A stretch of DNA of 64,000 nucleotides from positions 8,866,001 to 8,930,000 of the forward strand of contig CATNEN010000025.1 of assembly GCA_950097015.1 (NCBI GenBank), read 5' to 3'. The stretch comes from Macrostomum hystrix. Taxonomy: Eukaryota > Animalia > Platyhelminthes. This document shows positions 4,366-64,000 of this stretch, piece by piece; positions within the stretch are counted from its first letter, which is position 1, and each line of letters begins with the position of its first letter. The position numbers were made by a program, and so were the translations under genes. Below the pieces are notes generated by a model, which made no database searches, was not told where the DNA came from, and was given only the letters and a program-made list of their open reading frames with translations.

Positions 4366-4373
4366 CCCATCAG

Positions 4374-10906: not shown

Positions 10907-13900
10907 ATGACTACAAAGCTGAGCTCATTAATCGTTATTTCTCTGCTGCTGATCCGTAAGTGAAGTGGCTTGTTCGTTGAGGTTACATAATGATATTGAT
11001 TATTAATTATATTCGCTGATTAAAATTGCCCGTTGGGGCTACATGTGCAGCACAGCACAGCCGTAGCTATTGCGCGGCTCATCTGAAGGCAGCATGCAGC
11101 TGTTCAGTCCATGGACCGGGGCCACACCTACCCTCAATTACCAGCTAGTACCCGTTTTACAGCTGGGTGAACTGAAGCAATGCTGAGTGAGTTGTCCTGC
11201 TAGTGGACACGAATTGTTCCAGCGAAGGCGGAATCGAACCCCCGACCTTCAAGTCGATTAGCTTGAGAAAACCACTGGCTACAAACCCTGATTTCATATA
11301 ATTTTATTAAAATCTGTACTATTAATTATTTATTAAACATTGTCAGATACTGCCAGGTCTGCGGTTTGGCACTGCATACACAACGCACGCCGCGAAGACC
11401 CCGTCAAAATTGGAGACATCAACGCGATGATGGTGAGTAGTATGTTGCAAACGGCCTTTATCGACCAGAAGATAAGAAATCCTTAGATTAAAGGATACTT
11501 ATGTACTGAGTACGTAAGCGATGCCTTAAGAATAGCCAAGTAGGCGAGTTTTATTAGCACCCAGTTGTGTCAGATTTGCAGCCAATGACAATAGACTGCG
11601 CTTTCAAAGGCTGTGTGCCTGTACGTGGACTGAGGAGGCCGCGACTCCCCACAAAAATTTTTACCTAAGCTAATATGCTGGCACTAGTTATATAGATGGC
11701 TAAGTGTGAAGAAAATGCTATTTAAACGACTTGCTCAACCTCCAAGACACATTTAGCTTCTATTCGTGCGGTTCTATCCAGTCAGCTGCAAGGAGCCAGG
11801 ATAAAATAAAGCTGCGTCTGCTGTTTCAGGTGATGACGTATGTCCGAGGTGATCCGGGCTATAGGAAGAACCTGGAGTGCGGGTATCTTCTGAGCGTGAT
11901 CAACTATGACCAGCCCAGACAGATGTACATTGACGTGCCCGTGGTGGACTTTGACAACAATATTGACCCGTTTTGCAACAAAACCGACGTGTTCAGCTTC
12001 TGGCATAAGTACAACGAGAGTGAGTGGTTGGCTTAAGATAAAAGTTTCCTCTAAGTTTCCTCTCAACCCTCGACAATTCAACACTCCTATCAAGTAGAAA
12101 TCATTTATAGTAATTCAACTAAAACTCCGAGTCACAGTAATTTCGTCGGCTTTCGCCTAAAATTAAAATTTTAACGTAAAAGTACAAGCAGGCAATGTGT
12201 GACTTTTGATTAAGGAAAATGTGGTGCTTTCGTTTTGGCTTTACGAGTGTAATTTCGTAACTCTATAAATATTGCGAACATCTCTGTTTAATTATTATTG
12301 AGTATTCACAACAGCTGCTATCAGCCGACTGCACACATTTCAGCTGCTTGGCGGCGGGAGTCCTGGTGCAGTGAATCGTCCGTGTCACGCAGTTTCCGAT
12401 TCTTGCCGTTCAGGCAGCAAATAATCAACTTGTGGGACTCGTGAGTAGCACTGCAGCTTCTTACTGAGCTCTCTTATGAGAATGCGAGTTGAGACCCTGC
12501 TGCCTCACTTACCACTTCACTCTGCAGGTCGTACTACCTGACTGCGCAATTCCGGTCTGACAATGAGCAAGTCCGTTCCGATGCCAAGGGATTGCAGTTG
12601 GATGCGTGGGTGGTGCACCCAAAATTTTGCCACTTGAAAATGATGGATCTCGATAACTACTGCTACCTGGTCACTCCTGAGAATGTGTCGCTAGCTCAAT
12701 CCAATCAGGTTGGAAAACTCTTACTCGGCAACTTTTTCACTGTCCGAAACGCCTCTTCTGGCCGGGATATCTTAGACTTTCTGCGCAGATTCTCTGAGAG
12801 AAGTACGCATTTCTTTTTCGAATTTCTGATGAGGATATTTTTGCTCAATTGTGCTCAATCTTGTCACCTCTTTGCGCTTCCCTCAGACAAAGCCAGGAAA
12901 GACGAGTATCCTTACGAGTCGCCACTGGACCTGACTAATCTCAGACTGTGGACCGGCTACTTTGTGAACGAATACTCCTTCAGCGAGGAGGACCCGGTCA
13001 TGTTTTACTCAGATCCGATAGACGACTGCATTGTCAAGCAAGTGAAAGTGTGAGTGCTGCTTCTCTATCCTGATTCTAGTCTAAAGGATATTGTAAATAT
13101 CATATGGTTTAGAATGTCAATCATTCGATTTCAGGACTCGTGAGATTTTGACCGGCTGTAATAAAAACCCAGCGCCTGTAGCCCTTAATTGGCTTAGCAA
13201 CGGCAGCGTGCATTTTTCCTGTGTGCCAGGCAACGATTCGATGCCAGCTCTGATCCAGTTCAGCCAGATTCCTAAAACCAAGGGCGACCTGCACCCGCAG
13301 CTGTTCCGCACCTGCGACATCGCGCCGCCAACAACGACAACTACAGCGCCGCCAACAACGACTACGACTCCGGAACCAACGACAACTACAGCGCCGCCAA
13401 CAACGACTACGACTCCGGAACCAACGACAACTACAGCGCCGCCAACAGCGACCACGACTCCGGAACCAACGACAACTACAGCGCCGCCAACAACGACTAC
13501 GACTCCGGAACCAACGACAACTACAGCGCCGCCAACAACGACTACGACTCCGGAACCAACGACAACTACAGCGCCGCCAACAACGACTACGACTCCGGAA
13601 CCAACGACAACTACAGCGCCGCCAACAACGACTACGACTCCGGAACCAACGACAACTACAGCGCCGCCAACAATGACTACGACTCCGGAACCAACGACAA
13701 CTACAGCGCCGCCAACAACGACTACGACTCCGGAACCAACGACAACTACAGCGCCGCCAACAACGACTACGACTCCGGAACCAACGACAACTACAGCGCC
13801 GCCAACAACGACTACGACTCCGGAACCAACGACAACTACAGCGCCGCCAACAACGACTACGACTCCGGAACCAACGACAACTACAGCGCCGCCAACAACG

Positions 13901-15058
13901 ACTACGACTCCGGAACCAACGACAACTACAGCGCCGCCAACAACGACTACGACTCCGGAACCAACGACAACTACAGCGCCGCCAACAACGACTACGACTC
14001 CGGAACCAACGACAACTACAGCGCCGCCAACAACGACTACGACTCCGGAACCAACGACAACTACAGCGCCGCCAACAACGACTACGACTCCGGAACCAAC
14101 GAAAACTACAGCGCCGCAAACAACGACTACGACTCCGGAACCAACGACAACTACAGCGCCGCCAACAACGACTACGACTCCGGAACCAACGACAACTACA
14201 GCGCCGCCAACAACGACTACGACTCCGGAACCAACGACAACTACAGCGCCGCCAACAGCGACCACGACTCCGGAACCAACGACAACTACAGCGCCGCCAA
14301 CAACGACTACGACTCCGGAACCAACGACAACTACAGCGCCGCCAACAACGACTACGACTCCGGAACCAACGACAACTACAGCGCCGCCAACAACGACTAC
14401 GACTCCGGAACCAACGACAACTACAGCGCCGCCAACAACGACTACGACTCCGGAACCAACGACAACTACAGCGCCGCCAACAACGACTACGACTCCGGAA
14501 CCAACGACAACTACAGCGCCGCCAACAACGACTACGACTCCGGAACCAACGACAACTACAGCGCCGCCAACAACGACTACGACTCCGGAACCAACGACAA
14601 CTACAGCGCCGCCAACAACGACTACGACTCCGGAACCAACGACAACTACAGCGCCGCCAACAACGACTACGACTCCGGAACCAACGACAACTACAGCGCC
14701 GCCAACAACGACTACGACTCCGGAACCAACGACAACTACAGCGCCGCCAACAACGACTACGACTCCGGAACCAACGACAACTACAGCGCCGCCAACAACG
14801 ACTACGACTCCGGAACCAACGACAACTACAGCGCCGCCAACAACGACTACGACTCCGGAACCAACGACAACTACAGCGCCGCCAACAACGACTACGACTC
14901 CGGAACCAACGACAACTACAGCGCCGCCAACAACGACTACGACTCCGGAACCAACGACAACTACAGCGCCGCCACCAATCAGAGCAGTGCCGTCAGCGGC
15001 AATACTATCATTATTATTGATTTTGTTGTTGCCCTTGTTATCATCGTGGCTATTGTGA
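10907..15058 (+). CDS. Copy A: signal peptide-CUB-like-C-type-lectin-like-mucin stalk surface protein, 7 exons, ~927 aa
   Basis: Exons 10907-10955, 11347-11432, 11830-12019, 12344-12440, 12528-12802, 12887-13049, 13135-15058; all introns GT..AG with matching phases; 2784 nt with no internal stop. MTTKLSSLIVISLLLI is a signal peptide; WHC...GYRKNLECxY/W...WCS...LTAQFRSD...KGLQL is a CUB pattern; C..DNYCYLV...GNFFTVRN...LWTGY is CTL-like (weaker). Confidence 0.85.
11000..11288 (-). mobile_element. tRNA-derived CORE-type SINE in intron 1 of the receptor gene (also ~36800-37090 and ~62126-62417)
   Basis: Minus strand: A-box-like gtagccagtgg, B-box ggttcgattcc, then CORE-like gcttcagttcacccagctgtaaaacgggtac. 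Confidence 0.85.
13322..14974 (+). repeat. Coding VNTR: 36 x 45-bp units encoding APPTTTTTPEPTTTT (mucin stalk)
   Basis: 13346-14965 = 1620 bp = 36 units, preceded by one 24-bp partial unit. Confidence 0.98.
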
Positions 15059-15185
15059 TCGGTGTCGTTGTCTACTTTAGTCGTCAAAGAGGACAGCAGC
15101 CGCCATCAACTAATGGGGACTAGCCGCCACTGCGGGGTAATCAGAAGGAGAAAAAGGCCAGAAGCCGCTACTGGGGACGAACACT

Positions 15186-15620
15186 CGGGATTTCAAAAGC
15201 GATAGAAACGCTGTGGCTAAGAGTGTCGGCTTGACTGTGGACAATGTCGAAGGCACTTTCTGAAGTCTGTTTGGTGGGCGCTTTTACTCATAATTTTGCA
15301 TTGGCTAACAGCGTTGCTTAATTTTGTTTTGTTTATAAAGACAGAAATGTTTTTACGATCGCTTATTTCCGGTCTGCGAAGGAAGGAAAACCGGAATTGT
15401 CATTTTTCTGTTTTCATTTGAAATCTAAAATAATCTGTAATGCATGCTGAAGAAGCAGAAGTGCCCCATTGTCAGTCGACCTTTCGAACCCCCGCGCGTG
15501 CGCGTATCTAGCTTGTAATTGCGATCCCCGCGACCCAGTTCCTGTATTCCCATGTTTTACTTCTCTGTTTAGTAGTAATTGGTGATGGAGCTAATGATAT
15601 ATTGATAAGGTTCCGCAATT
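15186..15620 (+). repeat. 3'-flank segment of the receptor gene, duplicated elsewhere in each unit (4911-5395, 32631-33150, 40958-41392, 57957-58476)
   Basis: cgggatttc(a/t)aaagcgatagaaacgctgtgg...gataa(a)ggttcc(g/c)caattaa is shared at high identity; the distal copies carry an (aacaattaatt)n expansion. Confidence 0.92.
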
Positions 15621-15996
15621 AAATTTATATTTCCCGAACATAGAATCCTTTTCCCCGGATTCCTATGATTCGAAATCCCCCATCCCCGGATCATTAATTG
15701 GTTAACTTGACTTGCTACATATCGAATTAAAGTAAGGATGCGAGAGGAAGCAGTCTATCTATTTGTGTGGTTATTATTATCATTAGTTAGAGGTTAGGAT
15801 ATAATTCTCCATCCTCAATACCGTTTTCTGATTGTTAGTTGTTAGATTGTTTCGTAATTGATTGTAGTAATTTGTCTGCAGCAATATATTTGAAGCAATA
15901 CCTGTCTTTAATTTCACTATTCTAATTATACGTTCCTTAAATATTTGGGCTTAAGTTATTATTGTAGTGTCTGTTATTAATGCTTCTGATGACAGC

Positions 15997-16316
15997 TGTT
16001 GTATCTTAAATAACTGACGCAACGGAGATTCAGATTTGTTAGACTTAGAGTAATAAGGAAAACACGCCGATAGGCGGCACTCGGCAGGCAGACGAATAGG
16101 AGTGTGTATTTGATATATTATAGCAATAGCCGTACGATATACGCATGAGTGCAGAGGTCGGGGCTTTTATTTATAGGCCCAAAGGCGTGTGGAGAGAGCA
16201 TTCTAGAAAGTTACTAAAAATAGACTACACGGGAAAGTTCTGGAACCAGTGATGGACTTAACGCCTTACGACAAAGAATAGAAATTTCTGGAAAGTTCCC
16301 GGGAATTACCGCAACA
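15997..16316 (-). mobile_element. Solo LTR, 320 bp (also 41769-42088)
   Basis: TGTTG...CAACA inverted termini; flanks acagc/acagt (5-bp TSD with one mismatch); tataaataaaa on the minus strand at ~16170. Confidence 0.75.
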
Positions 16317-16699
16317 ACAGTCTCAACAGCAGCAGCGACCCTTTTGACCCTTTCGGCCAATCGGCAATTTATTGGCCGATTTATAATATTTGTGAAGTTA
16401 AAATAGGAGGCCGCATCAAGAAAAAGATGTAGCTAGTTTAACCTGTCCTCAGGTGACGGCAATTCTTTCGGACTGTTCTAGACCTAGTGCCACGGCCATA
16501 GTATTCGCTATACCATTATCTTAGTTCCTTTCGGCTTAGGCTCTATAGGTTCTTTAGGTTCTCAGTGCAGCTTTTTCGAAACAGTTGCAACTAGTTAGCT
16601 GATTTAAAAGTAATTAAGCTAGTCATTTTGATCAAATCAAAATGCAAAAGTACTGAGAACACGTCTAGTCCTTTATAAAGCTGAGCTGCGGAGCATGCT

Positions 16700-17030
16700 C
16701 CATTTTATCTAAGATTGCAATCTCTGCTTGAACAAACACATGGGCAACGTTGCGAACACGTTGTCGGGCCATTGTCATGTTCCTGTGCCGCATCGCCAAG
16801 ATCACCAAACTGAGCAGCGTCACTCTCAGGATGCTGTACAGGGCCTACGGTGAGAGTGCTCTCACCTACGGCGCCCCAATCTTGACTCTGATCTGCGTCA
16901 CCAACCAGATCAAGCTGCAAAAGATCTAAACCCTTGCTCTGCGCATCTGCTATGGTGTGCCTTCTTACCTGAGCACCGAATACCTTCACAAACTGGCCGA
17001 CATGCCAATGCTCTCAGCCAGAGAAAGCAG
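16700..17030 (+). mobile_element. LINE RT C-terminal remnant (I/Jockey-like; also ~42472-42802)
   Basis: TLRMLYRAYGESALTYGAPIL...KLQKI*TLALRICYGVPSYLSTEYLHKLADMPML resembles the post-RT region of LINEs. Confidence 0.7.
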
Positions 17031-17169
17031 CTCGGTGTGGCCTGCATGCATGCCTTTTTATTTCAATTTTTATTTCAATATTTCAATTTTTATTAGATCC
17101 CTTCTTTGTGCGGGATTTCCCCTGTATATTTCTGCCTATTTTATCTCCCAATGCGTGCCTAAATATAGC

Positions 17170-17500
17170 CTTGCAAATATTGAATATTTTTTTGTTTCAT
17201 TAAGGCTCAATATTCGCATAAAATAAGCCAAATCAAATCGAGTGTATATATATTATGAATTTCGATTAAATCCAATAATAGTCTGCGGCAGAGTTTTTCG
17301 AAACTGATCAGCAGCCCCAGTCAAATAGGGAATTCGTTTTAACAACAACCTATTATACCCTTGCCTCAACCATAACCCTAAACCTAAACCTAACCCTAAA
17401 CCAAACCGTAACCCTAAACCTAACCTTAATGTTGTGACTGATTGTGTGAGTACACTTGCCCTGTGAGTAAACCTAGCGTGAGTCACTTTATACACAAAAT
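17170..17500. repeat. Interspersed repeat with a degenerate telomere-like (CCTAAA/CCTAAC) core; copies ~4730-4910, 32345-32630, 42940-43243, 57671-57956
   Basis: Shared cagca(g/c)cccagtcaaatagggaattcg...cctaaacctaac...ttatacacaaaa. Family is unknown. Confidence 0.8.
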
Positions 17501-17512
17501 ACAAGATACTAA

Positions 17513-18728
17513 GGGTGCGTTCGAGTAGCTTAAAATAGCTTAAAATGATTTAAACTGCCTTAAAACGGTATTTTAGCGACAGCAGTAAAACAAAGTAATT
17601 TTTCAGAAAATTCAATAAAAAAGTCGCTGCACTTCAGTCAATCATGATTACAGCATCCTGGAATGCCTTTGTTTAATATTTTTATATTGAATTGTCAGTC
17701 TAAGCTTGTTTTCAATAATTTAGAATACTTAGTTATAAGAACAAATACGTTTTGAAAAAATTGTAAAAGTATCCTGAGGGAAAAACATTAGGTAAATAAA
17801 ATTCTTTTAACGTTAGAAATCCTTTTTTCTGTATGAAATCCCATTCTAAGTTTGTTTTCTTACAATAGAATTTTTTGCTCATGGGACGCGCGCGCTAGTT
17901 TAACTGAAATTACTGTAGACGTTTATTTAATTATATATCGTGTATCTGCATATCTGTATATTAGGAACCATTTCTTGCTCAACCAATTTAGCTTGTCTTT
18001 GAAATTTTGTTACATTTTACCTAGTTTGTTCCGATTGTTTTAAGTGACTCCTTTCTATTTGTTTCAGTGTATTCGAAGTATTTTTGTTTCATACTGTTAA
18101 TTTTAACTATCTGATATTGCCAATATCTTTTTTGTATACTTCTACATTAAATTGTAACATTTGTAAAAATTGTAGGAGTTGGAAAAATTATTGCGGATAA
18201 ATATATATACAAATTGTATATTTTGAGTTAAGTTAATAAAGAGACGTGAATTGCTAACCGCTTTGCTTTAAATTTCTGCCCCAAAAACAACGGGCAAAAA
18301 AGCTAGTAATTAAATAAACGGCATACAGTAATTTCAGTTAAACTAGCGCGCGCGTCCCATGAGCAAAAAATTCTATTGTAAGAAAACAAACTTAGAATGG
18401 GATTTCATACAGAAAAAAGGATTTCTAACGTTAAAAGATTTTTATTTACCTAATGTTTTTCCCTCAGGATACTTTTACAATTTTTTCTAAACGTATTTGT
18501 TCTTATAACTAAGTATTCTAAATTATTGAAAACAAGCTTAGACTGACAATTCAATATAAAAATATTAAACAAAGGCATTCCAGGATGCTGTAATCATGAT
18601 TGACTGAAGTGCAGCGACTTTTTTATTGAATTTTCTGAAAAATTACTTTGTTTTACTGCTGTCGCTAAAATACCGTTTTAAGGCAGTTTAAATCATTTTA
18701 AGCTATTTTAAGCTACTCGAACGCACCC
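17513..18728. mobile_element. PIF/Harbinger-type foldback MITE, 1216 bp (also 43256-44471)
   Basis: ~405-420-bp near-perfect TIRs starting GGGTGCGTTCGAG; TAA on both sides (17510-17512, 18729-18731). Confidence 0.92.
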
Positions 18729-19024
18729 TAAATTGTGTATTTAGTATCTCCGTAATTAACCCGTCCAGTTTAACTAATCTTTAGCGGTATTCTTTAATTA
18801 TTTGCGCGAATTCACTGAACAAGTTTCCAAGAAATTCGACTACTGCTTAATTCGACTTCTTTTTCTATTCCGGTATCACGCCGTATGCTACTATGGACTA
18901 TGCTACTGTAAATATTTACTGCTTTGCCTTTATCACTTATTAGACTGACGTAATATTTTATTCCTATGTTACAGTTCTTTTCATTATGACGTATTTAAAT
19001 GATGTGCTCTGTGGCTGCTATCTG

Positions 19025-19335
19025 CAATTAATAATTAATAATTGATTACACCTGCCCCAATTGGGTCAGATGTGCAGCCGACAGCACAGCCGCAGCTAAT
19101 GCGTGGTGCATCTGAAGGCTGCGTACAGCTGTTCAGTCCATGGACTGGGGGGACGCCACACCCACCTTCAATTATCCCAGCTGATGCTGGTACCCATTTA
19201 ACAGCTGGGTGAACTGAAGCAATGCAGAGTTAAGTGTCTTGCTAAAGGACACAAATTGTTTCAGGGGAGTCGGGAATCGAACCCCCGACCTTCAAGTCGT
19301 GAGTCCGACGCCCTAACCACTAGGCTACAACCTCT
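19025..19335 (-). mobile_element. tRNA-derived CORE-type SINE, better-preserved copy (also ~44767-45077)
   Basis: gtagcctagtggttagggcg...ggttcgattcccg head, tgtgtcctttagcaagacacttaactc...cccagctgttaaatgggtacc core, (aatt)-rich tail. Confidence 0.88.
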
Positions 19336-20382: not shown

Positions 20383-20404
20383 TAATTATTTCTCTTTGTG
20401 CTAT

Positions 20405-52800: not shown

Positions 52801-55788
52801 CCCAGGGGCGAATTCCCTATGGTCTTCCCCAGGGGCGAATTTCCTGTGGTCTTCCCCAGGGGCGAATTCCCTGTGGTCTACTGTTAATGTCGAGTCTCTG
52901 AATGCCTAGGAATCGATTGGTTTCTAAAAATAGTTGCATTTCTTAAAGCCGTGCAGTTGCAAAGACGCATTCTATTCAGTAATATTTTAATTTGTACGAT
53001 TACATTCTTTACATTTCAAGCAACAACTCTTCTAATTTCAAAGTGTAGCAGTGCTCAGCTCACCTCCAGGTTGTAGTCCAGAATCTCGGACGTGTGAAAA
53101 TCTTCGTCATCGTCTCCGAAGGGATTCATAACGCACATAGCCACCTTGAGCCAGCCCATCAGAAAGAGGAACTGGCCAATTTAGAAAAAAAGTTCGCTCA
53201 GTCGGCCACACTGACCGTGCTGTCCCCTAGACTCAATCAGCAGCTAGACGAGCTCTACGAAAAGGTCAACGGCGCGGCGGGTTGCGTCGCCCTGGACGCC
53301 GTTCAACGCAGTCCACGCTGGGAGCTGGTTCGCCTGCCGCCTGCTATTTTTGTTGCTAGCCATTCGCAGCATCAGCAGCCTCAGCAGCTTCAGCCGCATT
53401 ACAATAGTCTTCAGCACACGCATCATTCAGATGTTCAGTTTCCTGATTCTCAGCTGCAGCAATTGCAACAGCAGCAGCAGCATCAACAGCAGCATCAGCA
53501 GCAGCAGCTGCCAATTCCTTCGCCGCGCATTCTATGGCAAGGCACTTTCGAGTTTACCAAATCCGCCACCAGAATGTCCTTCCAGCTGCCAGTTCGCTTC
53601 GTGGAGATTCTGTCGGCGCCTGATCAGCCGCCAAATCCTTGGAGCTTTCATCATTTTGAGCAGAACAAGCAAACCGCCAGTTGTGCAATTCTAAAGCCGG
53701 AACTTCATCCCACTGTCGAGGATCACTTTCGCAAATATCCCAGCTTGTAGAGTGCAGAATTACGGTACTATTTATTTTAACCAATCATGCGCTAACTACT
53801 CTACTGATCCGCTTAGTAGTATTTTTAGAAAATGCGAATTAGAAAACATACGCTCGTACAAGTACAACATGTGATTCATTTTACCAAAAAATGAGAATCG
53901 AATCAATCAAAAATCATGTGACTACTATTAATAGTATCCAATCAATTTTTATGTCATAAGCAACCAGCGATCCCACCAATCATGTTACCCAAAATCAATC
54001 AAAAGGTCAAGAAAGCGATAATCCATCTTTTTGCGCTTCTACTAGTTTAGTTGTAAAAAAGTCTAACCTCTCAAGTTGTCAAGCGTTGACCCAGACTTTT
54101 TGACACCATTTTGACACCTGTACTTTAAACGCACTCATCGAACCCGAGAGGGTCCGATTCTCTATAAATACAAGAGCTCCGAAGCGAGCCCAGATTCAGA
54201 GTCTCGCCGAGACGAGCAGAGTCTCGCAGAAAAGAGAAAACGGAGAGTCTGAAGTGGATTGGACTCCAGGTCCAAGACTTGTGGTAAGAGTTCCCTGATT
54301 TATCCTAATTAATTAATTATTAGCTTTCTTGATCTAAGTTAAACCTCTCCGAGTAATCGTTAAACCAACGATTACAGCGTAATCACAGACGTGTGATTAT
54401 ATTGAATATATTACAAAGGGTGAGCGCCAGACTCGTGGTAAAACCTACCAGGGCTGGTAAGAAGGAACACACTCCACAAGTGACTATTGGTTAACCGACA
54501 TCAACGATAAATCAGAATCAGGAAGATTCTGATTTATTCCTAAATTCCTAAAAGAGAAACAAGGAACTTATCAAGCTTTTATCGGGTGCGAATTGTTCCC
54601 ATCAATGGGGAAGATGTGCAGCACTTGTTGGACACTTTTGGATCCTGTGTGAGTCTTCAGAGCTTTAGTTCCAGCAACTAAGAGAGAGAGAGAGTAGGGT
54701 GAGGATATGAGAGAGTAGGGTAAGGATATGAGAGAGTAGGGTGAGGATATGAGAGAGTAGGTAAGGATATGAGAGAGTAGGGTGAGGATATGAGAGAGTA
54801 GGGTGAGGATATGAGAGAGTAGGGTGAGGATATGAGAGAGTAGGGTGAGGATATGAGAGAGTAGTGTGAGGATATGAGAGAGTAGGGTGAGGATATGAGA
54901 GAGTAGGGTGAGGATATGAGAGAGTAGGGTGAGGATATGAGAGAGTAGGGTGAGGATATGAGAGAGTAGGGTGAGGATATGAGAGAGTAGTGTGAGGATA
55001 TGAGAGAGTAGGGTGAGGATAGAGTAGGGTGAGGATATGAGAGAGTAGGGTGAGGATAGAGTAGAGTGAGGATATGAGAGAGTAGGGTCAGGATATGAGA
55101 GAGTAGGGTGAGGATAGAGTAGGGTGAGGATATGAGAGAGTAGGGTGAGGATATGAGAGAGTAGGGTGAGGATATGAGAGAGTAGGGTGAGGATATGAGA
55201 GAGTCGGGTGAGGATATGAGAGAGTAGGGTGAGGATATGAGAGAATTGTGTGTTTGGATATGATAGTAGCGTGAATATGTAAGATCGAACGTGTTTTAAG
55301 ATAAGCGCTACAACGCTTACTAAATCCTGAACCGCCGCCAGATGGCCCTAGTCTACAGTGAGCTGCTTGAAGTTTTCTTTCCTGAAGTTTTCTTTCCTGA
55401 AGTTTTCTTCCCTGAAGTTTTCTTTCCTGAAGTTTTCTTCCCTGAAGTTTTCTTTCCTGAAGTTTTCTTTCCTAAAGTTTTTTTTTCCAGAGTTTCTCTT
55501 TCCTAAACCACTGGGTGCCCACCCACCCACCTGTCTAATTAACCTGGCTGCCCAACCACCTGTCTAATTAACCTGGCTGCCCACATAACTGTCTAATTAA
55601 CCTGCCCACCCACCCACCTGTCTAATTAACCTGGCTGCCCACATAACTGTCTAATTAACCTGATTTATCTATCTAATCAACTTAGCTACCCACCCACTTA
55701 CCTATCTACTTGCATACCTACCTGCCTGCTTACCTACCTACCTACCTACCTACCTACCTACCTACCTACCTACCCACCTACCCATCAG

Positions 55789-56319
55789 GTGATTCTGGCC
55801 GGCGACCCGTAGCAGCTGGGCCCAGTGGTCCAATCAACCTGGGCACTGAAGTTCGGCCTAGGCGAGTCCCTGCTCCACCGCCTCATAGAGACCTCGCCGG
55901 CCTACGCCCGACGTCCCGGTCGCTATCCGGACGACGGCTACGATCCCCTGCTGGTGACGAAACTGCTGCAGAACTACCGCAGCCAATCCGCACTGCTCAC
56001 AGTCTACTCCGACCTGTTCTACCATTCCGAATTGATTCCGCGAGTGGATCCCGCGGCCGGCAATCGGTTCCTGACCTGGCCCAGCCTGCCGAATCCCCAA
56101 GTGCCGCTGCTATTTCACGGCGTCATCGGCGAGGACCGGCGCGAAGGCGACTCGCCGTCATGGTTCAATCCGGCCGAGGCTGTGCTGGTGGTTCGCTACG
56201 TCATCAACCTGCTGGCGCTTTGGCCGCATCTCGGCGACGCCAACGACGGCATGGGCGTGGTCACGCCGTACAGGAAGCAGGCCGAGAAGATCCGATCGCT
56301 GCTATTTGCCGATCGCTGA
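55789..56319 (+). pseudogene. MOV10: MOV10-family helicase exon fragment with premature stop
   Basis: Matches the unit B copy; TAG at 55810-55812. Confidence 0.88.
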
Positions 56320-59300
56320 GGTTGGCAAGGGAGCTACCGCATTGGCAAAAAGGTGGTACAAGATTGTGAACGACTTGTCAGTCTGCCAAAGCCTTCGCTT
56401 TCGACCTTGGCAGTCCAATCTTGAAACTATTTCTAGAAAGGGCCTGCGGGCAAGGTGTACTGCACCTACTGTGGATTAGGGCACAGGTCAGAAGCGTGCA
56501 ACAAGGTTGCCACGGCTACTATAGCCGCCGGACCTTCCTGCAACAAGAGAATCGCTGTTTTCGTTGCTTGCGCACAGGCCATTGGCTTCGCATGTGCAAT
56601 GACTCACGAAAGTGCAGAAACTGCGGAGGAGCTCATCACGTGAGCATTTGCATCCCTACCGCTCATAAACCTAAAACTAGCGATCGGCACATACATGTAG
56701 CTCAAAATGAAGGCGGGAAAAGGGGAAAAGACCCATGTCACGTGACAAGTGTCTACCGACCTCCGCAGAGCAGACAGATGCATCGCTTGTGAGGCAGTGA
56801 ATAAATTAGGACTTTTTTCATTTTAAATTCCCGCCACTTTTCCTCACGCGCTAGCTAAATATCGTGATCTCACGCAGTGCTCTTTGTTCGTAATATTCGC
56901 TCTCAAGTGGAAACATGCACCCACCCCAATTTCTTTGTATATATATATAGAGGAAAATATAAATGCGATCTTCAACCTGCTCCCTCGCTCCCCAGTCATA
57001 CCAATAACACTGGTTAAACCTACTATACGTTCTCGACGAAATATAAGCGATTAAACTTCCTAACTCTTTTCCTGTTTCGCTATTAAATAGACCGAGTTCC
57101 TTAGTTATTTTCCTAATAAAAGGAAAACAGTTAAAGATACCTTTGCCTTCCCAATCCTCTGCCAAAGATCTCTGGTCGGCCTTCTTTACCAAAACCCACC
57201 CTATTATATGATCCCTTTGAAATACCAATATACCGTCCTAAAATCCCGTCCAAAAGTCCACCTGAAGTCTATCTGAAGTCCACCTAAAAGTTCCCTAAAT
57301 ACCCCCTGAAGTCCCTAAACTCCGCCTTTATCCCTCATGAGACTGTACTAATCCCGGACCCCATAGAGGAAAGTAAGTGAGAGCGCGAAGGACGTTCACC
57401 AGGCAACTTCAATCCATCCTGATACGCCCCACGGACTGTGTGCCCCAGATCAGTGACCTTAGCCCTCGTGCCAGCAGCAGTAAATTCCGCTCCCATTGTT
57501 AGTAGCTAGTGTCTTGCCGCTCGGGCATTAGCGCTACCTTAGGTATAGCCCGAACAGCGTGGAAAATACCTATTCTCACCCTCATAACTTACGCTACCAT
57601 CCCCCCCAAATACTCAGCTCACCAATCCCAAATCCAACAAATAGAGAGAGAGCTGAGAGGTCTGCTACACTTGAAATATTGAAAAAAACTTATTGTTTCA
57701 TTATAAGGTTCAATATTCGCATAAAATAACCCAAGCCCAATAGTCTGCGGCAGAGTTTTTCGAAACTAATCAGCAGGCCCAGTCAAATAGGGAATTCGTT
57801 TTAACAACAAACCTATACCCTTATACCCTTACCTAAACCATAATTAACACTAAACCGAAACCAAAACCGAAACCGAAACCTAACGTTGTGACTGATTGTG
57901 TGAGTACACTTGCCCTGCGAGCAAACCTAGCGTGAGTGACCTTATACACAAAAATCGGGACTTCTAAAGCGATAGAAACGCTGTGGCTAAGAGTGTCGGC
58001 TTGACTGTGGACAATGTCGAAGGCACTTTCTGAAGTCTGTTTGGTGGGCGCTTTTACTCATAATTTTTTATTGGCTAACAATTAATTAACAATTAATTAA
58101 TAATTAATTAATAATTAATTAACAATTAATTAACAATTAATTATCAATTAATTAACAATTAATTAACAATTAATAAATTAAGCAGCTCATAAAAACAAAA
58201 ATGTTTTTACGATCGTTTATTCCCGGTCTCCGAAGGAAGGAAAACCGAAATTGTCATTTTTTTGTTTTTAGTTGAAATCTAAAATAATCGGTAATACATG
58301 CTGAAGAAGCAGAAGTGCCCCATTGTCAGTCGACCTTTCGAACCCCCGCGCGTGCGCGTATCTAGTTTGTAATTGCGATCCCCGCGACCCAGTTCCTGTA
58401 TTCCCATGTTTTACTTCTCTGTTTAGTAGTAATTGGTGATGGAGCTAATGATATATTGATAAAGGTTCCCCAATTAAGTTCATCACTTAAAAGACAGTCT
58501 ACGTCTACGCTCAACGACTCAAATCCAGCGTCAGCTACTGGCTCCTCGGTCACGGCGTGTGCCACTCGAGATGAATAGAAAGTGTCCGATTCATCGACGA
58601 GCTTGTCCCACAGCTTTACAGCGACAATGTTTGTTAGTAGTAACCCATCTGTTGCCCTTCCTGTCGCCAAGGCTATTTCGCTCAGTACTGACGGTCAACG
58701 AGAACTTCTATAGTCCGAGTCTTGTTGGACACGGCTAGCAATAGGTCATACATCAGGAAGGATGTGTGTGAACTCTGAAACATCGAGTCCGCCACAACTG
58801 AATCATTGACGGTGTCGACCTTTACAGGTATCAATACCACAATTGCATCAGGTAGCGTCTCAGTCTCAATTCGAAAAATCGATTCACACTAAGTTCTGAA
58901 ATTGCGTGCTAATTTTGTCAAAGAGATCTGCGAGCCTCAGCGCTCAGTCTTAGTGAACGAATTCCCTCACCTGAACGGCTTGGACTTAGCGGATCCGTAC
59001 GACCCTCGTGATGCAAGCACCGATCTCAATCCTAATTGGCGCTGATCACTACTACGATATTGTCGGTGGTAAAGTCGTTCGTGGGTGTGAGGGACCGGCG
59101 GCTGCGTCGTCCAATCTGGGATTCGTTCTCTGTGGACCAGTGAAACTTAAAGAGAAAATGTCTAGTCGCTCTAGTAGATTAAAAATTCATTCGCTTATCC
59201 ACTCTCTTATCCGAGTTCAACTGGTATTCGTATTAATTCATTTCGCCTTTGTTGTTGGTATATTTTTCACATAATCTCCATTACTACAAGTAATCTCTGC

Positions 59301-62033
59301 ATTAATTGCATTCTCGGCATTAATCTCTGCATTAATTGCATTCTCTGCATTAATCTCTGCATTAATCTCTGCATTAATCTCTGCATTAATTGCATTCTCT
59401 GCATTAATCTCTGCATTAATTGCATTAATCTCTGCATTAAGAAAGAAAAATCTAAAGCCTGAGGACAGGTCGCTGACTAGCTATTGTAATTTGTAACAGA
59501 GTATGATGAGCTGACATTAATAATTGTATTCAGAAATGGACTACAAGTCAAAAAACTAAAAAATACCCAGCGGGAAAGCCTACCTCGAATCTAGCTGAAT
59601 GTAACTCTAGTTTTTAGGATAGGCTTGAATTTTCTTTTTAGTGCATCAAAATCATGCACCAAAAAATCGTTCAGTTTCAAAAAAATCGGCCAAACAAAAT
59701 TTTAACTTAAAATAGCAAGAATAAGTCTAGTTATATTCTAGCTATATAGTGTCTGTCGTTTTTCGAGAAAACTATTTTTTGTTTTAAAATATTTTCATAG
59801 CACAGAATAACAAAACTTTACAATAATATTTTTGTTCTTACGCGAAACAAAGTGTGGGTTGTAAAATAGCAATCTCTTAATTAAGTATGATAATAAAAAA
59901 GAAAAAATTGAAACGTCTTACCATTGGTACAGTCCATTTTTTAACTTTTCTTGTGTTCTCGCGCGCCGACTAACTAGCAAGCCTACATTTTATACTATAG
60001 ATTTGACTGGTTCCTAAGTCTCGCTTTTTTGTGGAAATTACCAAGGTACGGAAATGTTAAAACCTCTATCAGAACGTTTACAACTCTTATGTGTTTCTTT
60101 CTCATTTTGAACTTTTTATTATTACTTATTTCGATACAGCAATATGTACAATATAATGTTGTAGGTAATGCTAATGTAGCTATTTAGCTGGTCAATCAAA
60201 GCACTTTGCTGAGTTTTTTAATCAGAATATACATTTCAACTAGCTAAGCTAATATACAAATCAACGAAAATATACAAATCAGTTCCTTTAAAAGTATTTC
60301 GAGTTAGTGACGTGACATTTTTAAAAGAAATGTTTATTTAAATTGAACTATTTTAAGAAGATAGATTATAAATTGTATTAGGAATTTAAGGGATTTAGTT
60401 TCATTAATTTTAACTCTTCAAAAAATACACACAGTAGAAACTCGAATTATTTTATGCATTGATCCCAGGAAGGAAGTATTAGAGCAAACAAAAAGCAGTT
60501 GCTAATATAGCTATCCAACCCTTTTCCTGAATTCAAAAGGAAATCAATAAAATTATTTGAAATCTTTGAAAGTGAAATATCCAAACTTATTTTGTCAGAA
60601 GAGATAACCAGAAAAACAATTCTCTTTTAGCTTAGCATCATTTTATATAATTAATATCTTTAATAACGCTTTTATATTCACTTTTTTATGGAAATCAAAT
60701 ATAATTATTCATGTACAACTTAGTAGTCTAGCCTTTTCACTAGAATTCATGATGCAATAATTATTGGAATCGGCATTCAGCCAGCCAAGAATTTAACCTT
60801 TTTTGGCCTCTCATTAAATGCATTAGGCAAACTCGTTTTTCGAATATTTAATACCTTTAGAATAAAGGCACATTGTCGAAAATGTCAAGGTGTCTTGCGA
60901 GTAACATTTGGACTGTTTAGAAAAAAACACGACCAATTTTGGTTGAGGCATGCAGCCTGTAGAGCGACGTTCGACAGACAGACAGACAGACTTTAGAGAT
61001 TTAGTATAGGTGGATGGATGGACTAGCAATTTTAGCCCCCTCTGGGCAGCGGAAACCGGATTTTGGGATCTATAAATTCCCCTCCTTTTTCAAGGTAGGC
61101 CTAAAGTACGCTAATAAACACATCAAAATATTTTTATGGTTTCATTTAGTGACACTAGATCGCAGCCAGCGAACCCGCTCGGACTCCATCATTTTTAAGT
61201 TATTAGCAGACCCAACTCTTATCTCTTATTCTAATTTTAAGCAATATTATTCAGACGATAAATATGTAAAAGTAATGTTACCCGGAGTTGAGACGTACTC
61301 TATACTCGTTTAGACTAGGAAACCATAAGCTAGCTTGAGAAACATTGCGAGCTGCCAGACAGAAAGTTCCCTATGAGAATAGATTATTTAGTAAGTGCAA
61401 ACTTAAAGTGGAAAACGAGGTCCAGTTCTTATTCAAGTGCAGTTGGAATAGTTATAGCTCATCACGTTCGAATTTCGATAAGGAAATTTCAGGGCGTGAA
61501 ACTCCTAATTTCACGTCCCTAACAGCAGAAGAAAAATCTATCCACATATTGGCGGCACAAGACGACAGGGAAACCTCTGAAGCACTGGCAAACTACATCG
61601 TCAAGAAACATGTAAAATAAGATAAGCTGCCCTGAAGCAGCTAACATTTAAATGGCAATCAGGACGATTTATGAATAGTTCTTCTTGTTCTTCGCTGAAA
61701 TGGGGGCGAACCTTGCTTAAGGGGACATTGGTTCTATTCTTAAGAGGGGCATTGTTGGTTCTCTGCAATTGGGGGCATTGGTTTTCTGCTAAAGATGAAT
61801 TATTTCTTACTAGTATCACTTACATTTACTAATTAGAGATTTGGTAAAGGTGGATGGATGGATAGGTGGGTTTTTTTATTACTACTACTACTGTTGCGTA
61901 GTAGTATCGAAGTAATATCGAAGTAGGCTTACTAGGAGAGCAATACAAGATGTACTTTTATGAGGCACAAACTTTTGCATCCTAACATCATAAATCTAAT
62001 TTTTGAATTCTGTTTCAGAACTGAAAGCTTAAC

Positions 62034-63950
62034 ATGACTACAAAGCTGAGCTCATTAATCGTTATTTCTCTGCTGCTGATCCGTAAGTGAAGTGGCTTGT
62101 TCGTTGAGGTTACATAATGATATTGATTATTAATTATATTCGCTGATTACACTTGCCCGTTGGAGCTACATGTGCAACACAGCACAGCCGTAGCTATTGC
62201 GCGGCTCATCTGAAGGCAGCATGCAGCTGTTCAGTCCATGGACCGGGGGCCACACCTACCCTCAATTACCAGCTAGTACCCGTTTAACAGCTGGGTGAAC
62301 TGAAGCAATGCTGAGTGAGTTGTCCTGCTAGTGGACACGAATTGTTCCAGCGAAGTCGGAATCGAACCCCCGACCTTCAAGTCGATTAGTTTGAGAAAAC
62401 CACTAGGCTACAAACCCTGATTTCATATAATTTTATTTAAAATGAGTTCTGCTAAAATCTGTGCTACTAATTATTTATTAAACATTTTCAGCTACTGCCA
62501 GGTCTGATGATTGGCACTGCGTGCACGGCGCAACCCACGAAGCGGAAGCCAAAATTGGAGACATAAACGCGATTAGGGTGAGTAGTATGTTGCAAACGGC
62601 CTTTATCGACCAGAAGATAAGAAATCCTTAGAATAAAAGATTCCTATGTACTGAGTACGTAAGCGATGCCTTAAGAATAGCCAAGTAAAGCGAGTTTTAT
62701 TAGCACCCAGTTGGGTCAGATTTGCAGCCAATGACAATGGACAGCGCTTCCAAAGGCTGTGTGCCTGTACGTGGACTGAGGAGGCCGCGACTCCCCTCAA
62801 AAGTTTTTATCCGAGCTAATGCTGGCACTAGTTATATAGATGGCTAAATGTGAAGAAAATGCTTTTTAAACGACTTGCTCAACCTCCAAGACACATTTAG
62901 CTTCTATTCGTGCGGTTCTATCCAGTCAGCTGCAAGGAGCCAGGATAAAATAAAGCTGCGTCTGCTGTTTCAGGTGATGACGTATGTCCGAATTGATCCG
63001 GGCTATAGCAAGAACCTGGAGTGCACGTGGACTCTGAAGGCGATCAACTATGACCAGCCCAGACAGATGTACATTGACGTGCCCGTGGTAGACTTTGACA
63101 ACAATATTGACCCGTTTTGCAACAAAACCGACGTGTTCAGCTTCTGGCATAAGTACAACGAGAGTGAGTGGCTTGGCTTAAGACAAAAGTTTCCTCTAAG
63201 TTTCCTCTCAACCCTCGACAATTCAACACTCCTATCAAGGAGAAATCATTTATAGTAATAATTCAACTAAAACTACGAGTCACAGTAATTTCGTCGGCTT
63301 TCGATGCAAATTAAAACTCTAACGTGGAAGTACAAGCAGGCAATGTGTGGCTTTTTATTAAGGAAAATGTGGTGCTTTCGTTTTGGCTTTACGAGTGTAA
63401 TTTCGTTACTCTATAAATATTGCGAACATCTCTGTTTAATTCTTATTGAGTATTCACAACAGCTGCTATCAGCCGACTGCACACATTTCAGCTGATTCGC
63501 GGCAGGAGTCCTGGTGCAGTGAATCGTCCGTGTCACGCAGTTTCCAATTCTTGCCGTTCAGAAGGCAAATAATCAACTTGTGGGACTCGTGAGTAGCACT
63601 GCAGCTTCTTACTGAGCTCTCTTATGAGAATGCGAGTTGAGACCCTGCTGCCTCACTTACCACTTCACTCTGCAGGTCGTACTACCTGACTGCGCAATTC
63701 CGGTCTGACAATGAGCAAGTCCGCTCCGATGCCAAGGGATTGCAGTTGGATGTGCAGGTGCTGGACCCAGATTATTGCCACCTGAAAATGATGGATCTCG
63801 ATAACTACTGCTACCTGGTCACTCCTGAGAATGTGTCGCTAGCTCAATCCAATCAGGTTGGAAAACTCTTCCTCGGCAACATTTTCACTGTCCGAGGCGC
63901 CTCTTCTGGCCGGGATATCTTAGACTTTCTGCGCAGATTCTCTGAGAGAA
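62034..63950 (+). CDS. Copy C of the CUB/CTL-like protein, exons 1-5 (truncated by the window end)
   Basis: Exons 62034-62082, 62492-62577, 62974-63163, 63492-63588, 63676-63950; frames and GT/AG sites are conserved. Confidence 0.85.
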
Positions 63951-64000
63951 GTACGCATTTCTTTTTTGAATTTCTGATGAGGATATTTTTGCTCAATTGT

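What the first reader, a model, noticed from the sequence alone, without database searches (positions are those of the whole stretch)
10907..64000. Tandem array of a CUB + lectin-like + mucin-stalk surface receptor whose ectodomain exons diverge almost only by amino-acid change
Seen: three intact copies with exons 1-5 of equal length and canonical splice sites. By hand count, copies A and B differ at ~27 amino acids in exons 2-7 (11 in exon 2, 8 in exon 3, 5 in exon 5, 2 in exon 6, 1 in exon 7) against only ~3 synonymous codon changes. Exon 2 differs at ~17/86 nt (~20%), while the adjacent intron 2 differs at roughly 2%. The signal-peptide exon is invariant. Established: exons diverging faster than introns, with dN much greater than dS, is the signature of diversifying selection in immune, allorecognition or gamete-recognition receptors; CUB and CTL domains mediate ligand and glycan binding. 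Inference: an unannotated, rapidly diversifying recognition-receptor family displayed on a long O-glycosylated stalk.
Basis: partly seen in the sequence, partly recalled or inferred. Interest (0 to 1): 0.92.

Follow-up and report, generated by a model that had tools for sequence, protein, structure and literature searches.

The report
Flatworm mucin-stalk surface genes, hypervariable exon
A flatworm (Macrostomum-type) genome carries a tandem row of unannotated genes for a cell-surface protein on a long sugar-coated stalk; the repeat units are almost identical except for one short exon and a few patches at the tip of the protein, which suggests a variable recognition molecule but does not prove it.

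Summary
The window holds a 25.7-kb tandem unit: A 10787-36587, B 36588-61913, and C from 61914, cut off by the window end. Each unit starts with a 7-exon GT-AG gene. The product has a signal peptide, a ~310-aa head, about 37 copies of a 15-aa Thr/Pro repeat, and a GPI-like hydrophobic tail.

- **Divergence:** exon 2 differs by 20-26% in all three pairs, against 2-4% for the flanking introns (P 1e-9 to 1e-12). The remaining 23 kb of the unit differs by about 0.1%.
- **dN versus dS:** the claim that dN is much greater than dS is weak. Omega is 2.1, 1.7 and 1.0 for the three pairs, none significant. Inside exon 2, pS is about equal to pN.
- **Pattern of change:** differences come as copy-specific multi-base patches, one of them intronic, in a strongly mosaic order (53 runs against 84.5 expected). 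That points to gene conversion or recombination plus retained diversity, not simple point-mutation selection.
- **Domains:** no Pfam or PDB sequence match supports CUB or C-type lectin. Low-confidence models lean towards a C-type-lectin-like fold. CUB rests on motif inspection only.
- **Relatives:** about 12 uncharacterised Macrostomum lignano proteins, all transmembrane-type.

The same scan noted sister arrays elsewhere in this genome. Function is unknown.

The parts
10787..36587 (+). Tandem unit A (25.8 kb): gene head followed by transposon- and satellite-rich tail
   Evidence: Self-BLAST offsets of ~25.77 kb. The A/B alignment is 1.2-5.6% diverged over 10787-13286 and ~0.1% over 13287-36587.
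36588..61913 (+). Tandem unit B
   Evidence: The tail-to-head junction is identical to that of B to C: 0 differences over the aligned stretch 34000-36800 versus 59326-62126.
61914..64000 (+). Tandem unit C, cut by the window end after exon 5
10907..15058 (+). Gene A, 7 exons, 927 aa (exons 10907-10955, 11347-11432, 11830-12019, 12344-12440, 12528-12802, 12887-13049, 13135-15058)
   Evidence: The spliced ORF is intact, all introns are GT-AG (391, 397, 324, 87, 84 and 85 nt), and the junctions match M. lignano relatives.
36708..40830 (+). Gene B, 7 exons, 912 aa
62034..63950 (+). Gene C, exons 1-5 (open; the rest lies outside the window)
10907..10955 (+). Exon 1: signal peptide (MTTKLSSLIVISLLLI...), invariant in A, B and C
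   Evidence: 0/49 differences in all pairs. Signal-peptide character is by inspection.
11347..11432 (+). Exon 2: hypervariable 86-nt exon encoding the first ~25 residues of the mature protein, including the first Cys (B copy 37150-37235, C copy 62492-62577)
   Evidence: 19.8%, 23.3% and 25.6% nt divergence against 2-4% in the flanking introns. 18 of 29 codons vary. Elevated divergence (8%) also covers the last ~40 nt of intron 1.
11878..11897 (+). Exon 3 patch (codons 63-68): A reads GYLLSV, B and C read TWTLKA
   Evidence: 9 nt changes in 17 nt, all nonsynonymous. The B/C state resembles the family consensus KW(I/T)LQP.
12603..12626 (+). Exon 5 patch (codons 167-174): A reads AWVVHPKF, B reads AWALDPKF, C reads VQVLDPDY
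   Evidence: C shares 6 of 8 codons with the TM-type paralogue (GTG CAG GTG CTG .. GAT TAT). A and B are derived by 7-8 nonsynonymous and 0 synonymous changes.
13332..14978 (+). 45-nt minisatellite, 36.6 copies, encoding the TTTTAPPTTTTTPEP mucin-like stalk (B copy 39149-40750, 35.6 copies)
   Evidence: TRF: 99% and 98% matches, 0% indels. Translation.
14972..15058 (+). C-terminal hydrophobic tail PPPIRAVPSAAILSLLLILLLPLLSSWLL followed by a stop; GPI-signal-like
   Evidence: Translation. There are no residues after the hydrophobic stretch. No GPI predictor was run.

Best explanation
This is a genuine tandem array of a Macrostomum-restricted surface-glycoprotein gene.

**The protein.** Each copy encodes a signal peptide and a ~310-aa cysteine-containing head. 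The head has an all-beta, CUB-like N-half and a C-type-lectin-like C-half that lacks the canonical sugar/Ca motifs. The head sits on a ~550-aa Thr/Pro O-glycosylation stalk and ends in a hydrophobic tail, most likely exchanged for a GPI anchor.

**How the array evolves.** The array evolves in concert. Unequal crossing-over or gene conversion keeps the 23-kb unit tail, the stalk repeat and (for B and C) the promoter and exon 1 essentially identical. The 2.5-kb head-coding segment is instead a mosaic of older, diverged tracts. Three short coding stretches stay strongly different between copies: exon 2 (the mature N-terminus), exon 3 codons 63-68 and exon 5 codons 167-174.

**Most likely cause.** Diversity at these stretches is retained, and probably favoured, by selection against homogenisation. 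It is shuffled by short-tract conversion. The array would then offer several alternative binding heads held far above the cell surface.

**Shown here:** gene structure, array structure, the exon-versus-intron contrast, the mosaicism, long-term purifying selection on the core, and restriction to Macrostomum.

**Inferred:** selection for diversity, the GPI anchor, O-glycosylation, the fold names and any recognition function.
For: - **Array and strata of divergence:**. The tail differs by ~0.1%, head introns by 2-4% and exon 2 by 20-26%.
- **Intact genes:** ORFs are intact with canonical splice sites in two full copies and one partial copy. No indel falls in any exon, whereas introns carry 5-7 indels per pair.
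- **Exon 2 excess:** P 1e-9 to 1e-12. Nonsynonymous divergence exceeds intron divergence in all pairs (odds ratio 1.7-2.6, P 0.029 to 2e-5).
- **Shift in regime:** omega among the copies is 1.0-2.1, against 0.40-0.48 between these genes and a TM-type paralogue (dS ~0.87).
- **Mosaic order:** copy-specific changes fall in 53 runs against 84.5 +/- 5.1 expected.
- **Family-wide pattern:** the exon-2 segment is also the least conserved part among M. lignano TM-type paralogues (27-35% identity, against 91-95% in exon 5).
- **Coding frame of the stalk:** within the 45-nt repeat unit, variation falls on third positions of ACN Thr codons in the mucin frame (sequence). That marks the mucin frame as the selected frame.
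- **C-type-lectin-like hint:** two independent low-confidence models return hit lists dominated by CTLDs, about 22/50 and 42/50 rows.
Against: - dN/dS is not significantly above 1 in any pair. It is ~1 within exon 2, where synonymous positions are as diverged as nonsynonymous ones.
- One equally dense patch of clustered changes is intronic (12147-12186). Patchy divergence therefore does not need coding selection.
- Only three copies were available, one of them partial.
- There is no expression evidence.
- No HMM or PDB sequence support exists for CUB or CTLD. The models have pLDDT 36-46, and fold matches reach only Z <= 4.0 and E >= 0.17.
- The ancestral TM plus cytoplasmic tail persists in another frame. 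The GPI-like end could therefore be a recent frameshift product of uncertain function.
Confidence: 0.6

Rival explanations
1. A neutral mosaic. The array was duplicated or homogenised very recently. The head segments then received ectopic gene-conversion tracts from diverged paralogues elsewhere in the genome, such as the sister arrays ~95 kb upstream noted by the scan. The hypervariable patches simply reflect old, weakly constrained donor sequence, with no selection for diversity.
For: - Copy-specific multi-base patches occur in a strongly clustered order.
- B and C switch sharply from 0% to 3-6% divergence inside intron 1.
- An intronic patch is as dense as the exonic ones.
- pS is about equal to pN in exon 2.
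- Region-limited conversion was the verdict of an earlier follow-up on another family in this genome (s1-258398).
Against: - Exon 2 is 5-10 times more diverged than both flanking introns in all three pairs. The drop to identity occurs exactly at its donor site.
- Random tracts should not spare the same 86-150 nt in every copy.
- Exon 2 is the least conserved part of the family, so it is the poorest substrate for homology-driven conversion.
- No donor cassettes exist in the window.
- Nonsynonymous divergence exceeds intron divergence.
- The exon 3 and exon 5 patches contain 0 synonymous changes.
Confidence: 0.25
2. An assembly artefact. The 'copies' are alleles or homeologues of a repeat-rich locus in a (hidden) polyploid flatworm genome, wrongly laid out in tandem. 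The diversity would then be allelic rather than paralogous.
For: The unit tails are ~99.9% identical over 23 kb. That is hard to assemble and is typical of haplotype duplication. I recall Macrostomum lignano as karyotypically unstable with a duplicated genome, but this was not checked here.
Against: - The sequence is continuous with no N.
- Three different heads are present.
- The same tail-to-head junction occurs twice with 0 differences over 2.8 kb.
- Satellite copy numbers differ between units: 45-nt 36.6 vs 35.6, 27-nt 9.8 vs 5.8, and 21-nt 42.3 vs 27.3.
- An older, degenerate unit tail precedes A (4141-9885, 93-97% identity).
Confidence: 0.08
3. Decaying or non-functional copies. The stalk expansion shifted the frame away from the ancestral transmembrane segment. 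The genes are now drifting, and the apparent high dN/dS is relaxed constraint.
For: - The TM plus cytoplasmic tail homologous to the paralogues is out of frame.
- Omega is ~1 for B-C.
- All three frames of the repeat are open, so a long ORF there is not informative.
Against: - Relaxed constraint cannot push exon divergence above intron divergence.
- There are no stops, frameshifts or indels in ~1,050 nt of non-repeat coding sequence in two copies, nor in 697 nt of the third, despite up to 26% divergence. All 17 splice-site pairs are intact.
Confidence: 0.07

Closest known systems
Macrostomum lignano hypothetical proteins BOX15_Mlig016362g2/g5, Mlig004633g3, Mlig016910g3 (UniProt A0A1I8GVV4, A0A1I8GCK8 and others)
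   Same: They are the only detectable homologues (42-47% identity). They share the exon structure and head: signal peptide, variable exon-2 segment, CUB-like part and lectin-like part. They also lie in tandem (3 genes in L001).
   Different: They have a short Ser/Thr stalk, a transmembrane helix and a cytoplasmic tail in one last exon. The window genes instead have a ~550-aa mucin repeat and a GPI-like end, with the old TM left out of frame. None of these relatives is characterised.
MHC class I/II genes (diverse peptide-binding exons amid homogenised introns and concerted evolution)
   Same: Exons are more diverged than adjacent introns, motifs are shuffled in short tracts, and the genes are tandem paralogues. 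Concerted evolution by gene conversion alongside balancing selection on exon 2 is described for avian MHC IIB (PMC5470263).
   Different: There is no homology. Here dN > dS is not demonstrated, the ligand and function are unknown, and the variation seen is between paralogues rather than a proven allelic polymorphism.
SmPoMuc polymorphic mucins of Schistosoma mansoni
   Same: It is a flatworm multigene family of mucin-like proteins with tandem repeats, reported as diversified by recombination between members (PMC2576457, found; title and abstract only were read).
   Different: There is no sequence similarity. As I recall it (the paper was not read in full), SmPoMuc varies through an N-terminal VNTR and the gene products are secreted parasite antigens. 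Here the repeat is a constant stalk and the variable part is the globular head.
CTLD-mucin-stalk receptors of vertebrates (CD93 / thrombomodulin / endosialin group) and nematode CUB + C-type-lectin (clec) proteins
   Same: The general layout is a lectin-fold head on an O-glycosylated stalk. CD93 and thrombomodulin CTLDs appear among the weak structural matches. The CUB plus CTLD combination in C. elegans clec genes is from my own knowledge.
   Different: There is no detectable sequence relationship. The EPN/QPD and WND sugar/Ca motifs are absent by inspection. The end is GPI-like instead of TM. There are no EGF or sushi modules.

Membership tests
CUB domain (Pfam PF00431) | Significant match to the CUB profile | tested here: not met
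   hmmscan against Pfam-A gives 0 families at E <= 10 for the window ectodomain. No CUB hit appears in any of 16 family sequences. A family profile against PDB chains gives 0 hits at E <= 10.
CUB domain (Pfam PF00431) | About 110-aa beta-sandwich with four Cys (C1-C2, C3-C4) and the ...F.SD....GF... tail motif | tested here: inconclusive
   By inspection, Cys26, Cys62, Cys93 and Cys116 are spaced as in CUB, and LTAQFRSDNEQVRSDAKGLQLD resembles the CUB C-terminal motif. The AF2 model is all-beta here but has pLDDT 24-39. Three UniRef names say 'CUB domain-containing', but relatives in the same family carry unrelated names (BAH, Longin, Transposase, ZP), so the names are unreliable.
C-type lectin-like domain (Pfam PF00059) | Significant match to the Lectin_C profile | tested here: not met
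   No hit at E <= 10.
C-type lectin-like domain (Pfam PF00059) | CTLD fold (beta-alpha-alpha-beta core with a long loop region) | tested here: inconclusive
   AF2 gives a beta-beta-alpha-alpha-beta5 order but pLDDT 46. The best Foldseek hits are Mincle CTLDs at E 0.17-0.19 and TM 0.26-0.34. In VIA-align about 22/50 and 42/50 top rows are CTLDs, but Z <= 3.5 and <= 4.0.
C-type lectin-like domain (Pfam PF00059) | Ca2+/sugar-binding motifs EPN or QPD plus WND | tested here: not met
   By inspection of the translated sequence, neither motif is present. If the domain is a CTLD, it is of the non-canonical type, probably not Ca-dependent and not sugar-binding.
Mucin-like (PTS) stalk | Long tandem Pro/Thr/Ser-rich repeats | tested here: met
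   36.6 and 35.6 copies of a 45-nt unit encode TTTTAPPTTTTTPEP (60% Thr, 27% Pro). O-glycosylation itself cannot be tested here.
GPI-anchored protein | N-terminal signal peptide plus a C-terminal hydrophobic stretch that ends the protein, preceded by small omega-site residues | tested here: inconclusive
   The tail ...IRAVPSAAILSLLLILLLPLLSSWLL ends at the stop codon and has small residues (S-A-A) just before the hydrophobic run. The spacer is short, and no GPI predictor or PI-PLC test was available.
Gene families under diversifying selection (MHC-, FREP-, allorecognition-type) | dN/dS significantly above 1 at defined sites | tested here: inconclusive
   Nei-Gojobori omega is 2.07, 1.67 and 1.03 (P 0.11-0.62) and ~1 in exon 2. 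Nonsynonymous divergence exceeds intron divergence (P 0.029 to 2e-5). Three sequences and evident recombination preclude site models.
Gene families under diversifying selection (MHC-, FREP-, allorecognition-type) | Variable residues cluster on a ligand-binding surface | not testable with these tools
   No model of usable confidence was obtained, and the spliced window protein could not be submitted for folding.

The most novel reading that the evidence does not exclude
The sharp, exon-bounded hypervariability next to 99.9%-identical unit tails might not be ordinary selection on conversion products. It could be the footprint of a dedicated germline (or even somatic) diversification process. One candidate is templated micro-conversion from a dispersed library of exon-2 cassettes. 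Another is repair from spliced cDNA, which would stop at exon borders. Either would give a free-living flatworm a repertoire of N-terminally variable surface receptors analogous to other invertebrate 'diversified receptor' systems.
Probability: 0.06. Interest if true: 0.85.

Novelty: new member of a known kind. Interest (0 to 1): 0.5.

Why it matters
My literature searches found no hypervariable recognition-molecule family described for free-living flatworms. Macrostomum lignano is, to my knowledge, a genetic model for regeneration, sexual conflict and mating biology.

If selection for diversity is confirmed, this lineage-specific family would be a concrete candidate for pathogen, partner or gamete recognition. 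It offers several alternative heads on a very long glycosylated stalk, and RNAi and in situ hybridisation in that species could test the idea.

The locus is also a clean natural example of three evolutionary rates (0.1%, 3% and 25%) side by side within one 25-kb repeat unit. It also shows a probable transmembrane-to-GPI anchor switch produced by a frame change next to an expanding coding minisatellite.

If the variation proves to be neutral conversion patchwork, the finding is an ordinary, lineage-restricted multigene family of unknown function.

Tried and rejected
1. I did not resend it and used only exact window translations or database relatives.
2. **Pfam scans.** Scans of the ectodomain and of all relatives found nothing relevant.
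3. **Profile against PDB sequences.** Nothing was found.
4. **Search for a mucin-stalk homologue.** The exon-7 ORF (region 1-66) gave no hit. The stalked subfamily is absent from the protein collection.
5. **A profile search for distant relatives.** It returned only M. lignano proteins, so no deeper alignment was possible for folding.
6. **Two AlphaFold runs.** They gave pLDDT 36 and 46, so variable residues could not be mapped on a structure. Fold searches were not significant.
7. **Simplest exon 5 donor rejected.** A donor at 12709 breaks the frame. The donor at 12803 restores it and matches the relatives.
8. **Local donor library.** I looked for extra exon cassettes or pseudo-exons in the window and found none.
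9. **P0006 as exon-shuffling evidence.** Its N-half looks like P0002 and its C-half like P0009. I rejected it because the annotation seems to fuse two neighbouring genes in L002.
10. **Literature.** Searches for the family, its locus tags, or Macrostomum hypervariable or positively selected genes found nothing specific.
11. **tRNA scan.** No tRNA genes were found. The intron-1 repeat that looks tRNA-derived by eye is not called as a tRNA.


Full report
**What is in the window.**
- A self-comparison shows a ~25.7-kb unit repeated head-to-tail: A 10787-36587, B 36588-61913, and C from 61914 until the window ends.
- An older, degenerate piece of the unit tail (4141-9885, 93-97% identical) lies upstream of A.
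- The sequence has no N.
- Most of each unit is transposon and satellite DNA. It holds reverse transcriptase, THAP, a helicase fragment and a zinc knuckle, plus 27-, 21-, 15-, 29- and 30-nt satellites.
- Each unit begins with one gene.

**Gene model.**
- Reading the head of unit A and splicing it gives seven exons with GT-AG introns of 391, 397, 324, 87, 84 and 85 nt, and an open 927-codon CDS. B gives 912 codons. C is open through exon 5, where the window ends.
- The obvious donor after 12708 breaks the frame. The donor at 12803 restores it.
- The resulting junction (FSER|NKARKDEYPYESPL) lines up with FIQR|NSDRLEEFPFESPL in annotated relatives.
- Exons 1-5 are 49, 86, 190, 97 and 275 nt in all three copies.

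**The protein.**
- It starts with a signal peptide. A ~310-aa cysteine-containing head follows.
- Then come 36.6 (A) or 35.6 (B) copies of a 45-nt unit encoding TTTTAPPTTTTTPEP.
- The C-terminus, ...PPPIRAVPSAAILSLLLILLLPLLSSWLL, stops right after the hydrophobic run. By inspection this is the usual look of a GPI-attachment signal; no predictor was run.
- Within the repeat unit the Thr codons are ACA, ACG and ACT. The internal variation therefore falls on third positions in the mucin frame, which argues that this is the selected frame, even though all three frames of the repeat are open.

- All are reproduced. A and B differ at 27 residues (11, 8, 0, 5, 2 and 1 in exons 2-7).
- Exon 2 differs at 17/86 nt (19.8%) and intron 2 at 8/397 (2.0%). 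Exon 1 is identical in all copies.
- With C included, exon 2 differs by 23.3% (A-C) and 25.6% (B-C), against 2.0-4.1% for introns 1-2.
- Fisher tests give P 1.8e-9, 6.4e-10 and 1.9e-12.

**Three strata of divergence.**
- Over the whole unit, A and B are essentially identical from 13287 to 36587, with 0-3 differences per 500 nt and two local exceptions. The 2.5-kb head is 1.2-5.6% diverged.
- B and C have no difference at all in the aligned stretch from 34000 to ~36800. That stretch includes the promoter region, exon 1 and the start of intron 1. They then become 3-6% diverged from ~37000 on.
- A 40-nt sliding window shows three coding peaks: exon 2 at 21-25%, exon 3 codons 63-68 at 15%, and exon 5 codons 167-174 at 15%. 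One intronic peak (12147-12186, 13%) is specific to C.
- The exon-2 peak spills ~40-60 nt into the end of intron 1. It ends exactly at the exon-2 donor, after which all three copies are identical for 55 nt.

**Is it dN much greater than dS?** Only weakly.
- Nei-Gojobori counts over codons 17-232 give omega 2.07 (A-B), 1.67 (A-C) and 1.03 (B-C), with binomial P 0.11-0.62.
- Inside exon 2, pS is 0.16-0.27 and pN is 0.19-0.25.
- Outside exon 2, A-B has Sd 0 and Nd 18 (P 0.014), but the other pairs are not significant.
- Using introns as the yardstick, nonsynonymous divergence is higher in all pairs (odds ratio 1.7-2.6; P 0.029, 2.4e-5 and 0.0056). Without exon 2 the excess is small (odds ratio 1.2-2.05).
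- Against a TM-type paralogue from M. lignano, exons 3 and 5 show dS ~0.87, dN 0.36-0.42 and omega 0.40-0.48.
- The core of the head is therefore under long-term purifying selection. The regime among the array copies is clearly different.

**Mosaicism.**
- At each variable site I recorded which copy is the odd one out. The string has long runs. A alone differs over 10789-11262 and in exon 3. C alone differs in exon 4 and in intron 3.
- There are 53 runs against 84.5 +/- 5.1 in 20,000 permutations.
- Many differences are compact multi-base replacements. Examples are GACCCCGTC versus GCGGAAGCC in exon 2, and 9 of 17 nt in exon 3.
- Polarising with the paralogue shows that C keeps the family-typical codons in the exon-5 patch (6 of 8 codons identical, including third positions). 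A and B carry 7-8 nonsynonymous and no synonymous changes. In exon 3, B and C are family-like and A is derived.
- No spare exon cassettes exist in the window.
- This pattern needs recombination or gene conversion among diverged sequences. Simple point-mutation divergence on a tree cannot produce it.

**Relatives and organism.**
- A full HMMER scan of 1.84 billion representatives with the longest contiguous open stretch (window:12529-13050) found five proteins.
- Word-indexed searches with a relative and with a family profile found 8 and 12 proteins.
- All hits are uncharacterised Macrostomum lignano proteins, 42-47% identical to the window protein. All have a short stalk, a transmembrane helix and a cytoplasmic tail.
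- No stalked form was found.
- One locus (NIVC01001192.1, GCA_002269645.1) has three such genes in tandem with the same exon plan. Its last exon holds the end of the head, the TM and the tail together.
- Among these paralogues the exon-2 segment is again the least conserved (27-35% identity). Exon 5 is 91-95% identical.
- The window therefore comes from Macrostomum (M. lignano or a close relative). This agrees with an earlier follow-up note in this scan.

**Domain names.**
- Pfam finds nothing at E <= 10 in the window protein or any relative. A family profile finds no PDB chain.
- AlphaFold with the shallow family alignment gave pLDDT 36 for a whole relative ectodomain and 46 for the lectin-like part.
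- Foldseek's best hits are Mincle CTLDs at E 0.17-0.19.
- VIA-align gives only Z <= 3.5 and <= 4.0, but about 22 and 42 of the 50 listed chains are C-type lectin-like domains.
- I read this as a lean towards a CTLD-like fold, not a demonstration. The EPN/QPD and WND motifs are absent by inspection.
- The CUB assignment rests on four cysteines and a CUB-like tail motif seen by eye, on predicted beta structure, and on three UniRef names. Those names are unreliable, because sister proteins carry unrelated ones.

**Anchor.**
- One base out of the mucin frame, the sequence after the repeat reads NQSSAVSGNTIIIIDFVVALVIIVAIVIGVVVYFSRQRGQQPPSTNGD followed by a stop. This is a normal type-I TM with a short tail, resembling the paralogues' TM region.
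- The ancestral anchor therefore survives out of frame. The present end looks like a frame-shift-derived GPI-type signal. It is identical in A and B, so there is no independent evidence that it is conserved.

**Interpretation.**
- The best reading (about 0.6) is a real, probably functional, lineage-specific surface-glycoprotein array evolving in concert. Diversity at the mature N-terminus and two further patches is retained, probably selected, and shuffled by short-tract conversion.
- A purely neutral conversion patchwork (about 0.25) is not excluded. It is favoured by pS being about equal to pN in exon 2 and by the intronic patch.
- Mis-assembly of haplotypes (about 0.08) is less likely. Three different heads, the repeated tail-to-head junction and the differing satellite copy numbers argue against it.
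- Decay (about 0.07) is also less likely, given the intact exons and splice sites in all copies.
- A recognition role is plausible from the architecture (a variable head on a stalk that would extend on the order of 100 nm if fully glycosylated; my estimate) but is untested.

**Comparison and novelty.**
- The phenomenon resembles MHC-type 'diverse exon, homogenised surroundings' evolution (PMC5470263). Within flatworms it loosely resembles the recombining SmPoMuc mucins (PMC2576457). There is no homology to either.
- No paper on this family was found.
- The same scan has noted sister arrays of this family elsewhere in this genome. Those notes are unverified.
- I rate it a new member of a known kind of system, of moderate interest until more copies and expression data are examined.

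Noticed in passing
window 14977-15122 (unit A) and 40749-40894 (unit B), + strand, frame one base before the mucin frame: An intact type-I transmembrane helix plus a short cytoplasmic tail, resembling the TM region of the M. lignano paralogues, lies out of frame with the stalk. The in-frame reading gives the GPI-like tail instead. This looks like a TM-to-GPI switch by frame change. Another first-stage note flags it too (s1-408161).
   Followed up: partly
window 13332-14978 and 39149-40750: All three reading frames of the 45-nt coding minisatellite are open (TTTTAPPTTTTTPEP, NDNYSAANNDYDSGT and QRQLQRRQQRLRLRN), and the unit contains no GT dinucleotide. The long minus-strand ORFs here are by-products.
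   Followed up: partly
window 17512-17917 / 18324-18729 (and the same in unit B, offset +25772): A perfect 406-nt inverted repeat with a 406-nt spacer (100% complementary): a foldback-type element, or a very recent inverted duplication, inside each unit.
   Followed up: no
window ~11040-11262 (intron 1 of gene A; likewise in B and C) and 19030-19338 (-): A SINE-like repeat that looks tRNA-derived by eye. ARAGORN calls no tRNA. The copy at 19030-19338 (45081-44773 in unit B) is 86-87% identical to a copy in the introns of the M. lignano paralogues in L001; the intron-1 copies are ~75% identical to it. The same repeat family thus sits inside related genes.
   Followed up: partly
window 12147-12186 (intron 3): A C-copy-specific cluster of ~8 substitutions in 24 nt within an intron, as dense as the exonic patches. 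It shows that patchy replacement is not limited to coding sequence.
   Followed up: partly
window 26982-27246 vs 52723-52879; 29047-29919 vs 54688-55244: Satellite arrays in the otherwise ~99.9% identical unit tails differ in copy number: the 27-nt unit 9.8 vs 5.8 copies, and the 21-nt unit 42.3 vs 27.3. The units are therefore distinct copies that have already slipped since homogenisation.
   Followed up: no
L002 (NIVC01001355.1) 9739-16970: The public gene model for P0006 (BOX15_Mlig004633g3) seems to fuse exons 1-5 of one family gene with exons 6-7 of the next gene in the tandem row. Its 'mosaic' protein is probably an annotation artefact.
   Followed up: partly
window 27461-28117 (+), repeated in unit B: A 218-aa Gln-rich ORF with no Pfam match inside the unit tail. 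It is unclear whether it is a gene or transposon debris.
   Followed up: no
window 1-4140: A GC-rich (59-67%) block with a 519-aa minus-strand ORF (2053-3612) and overlapping ORFs, upstream of the degenerate unit tail. It is probably a transposable element marking the 5' edge of the array.
   Followed up: no
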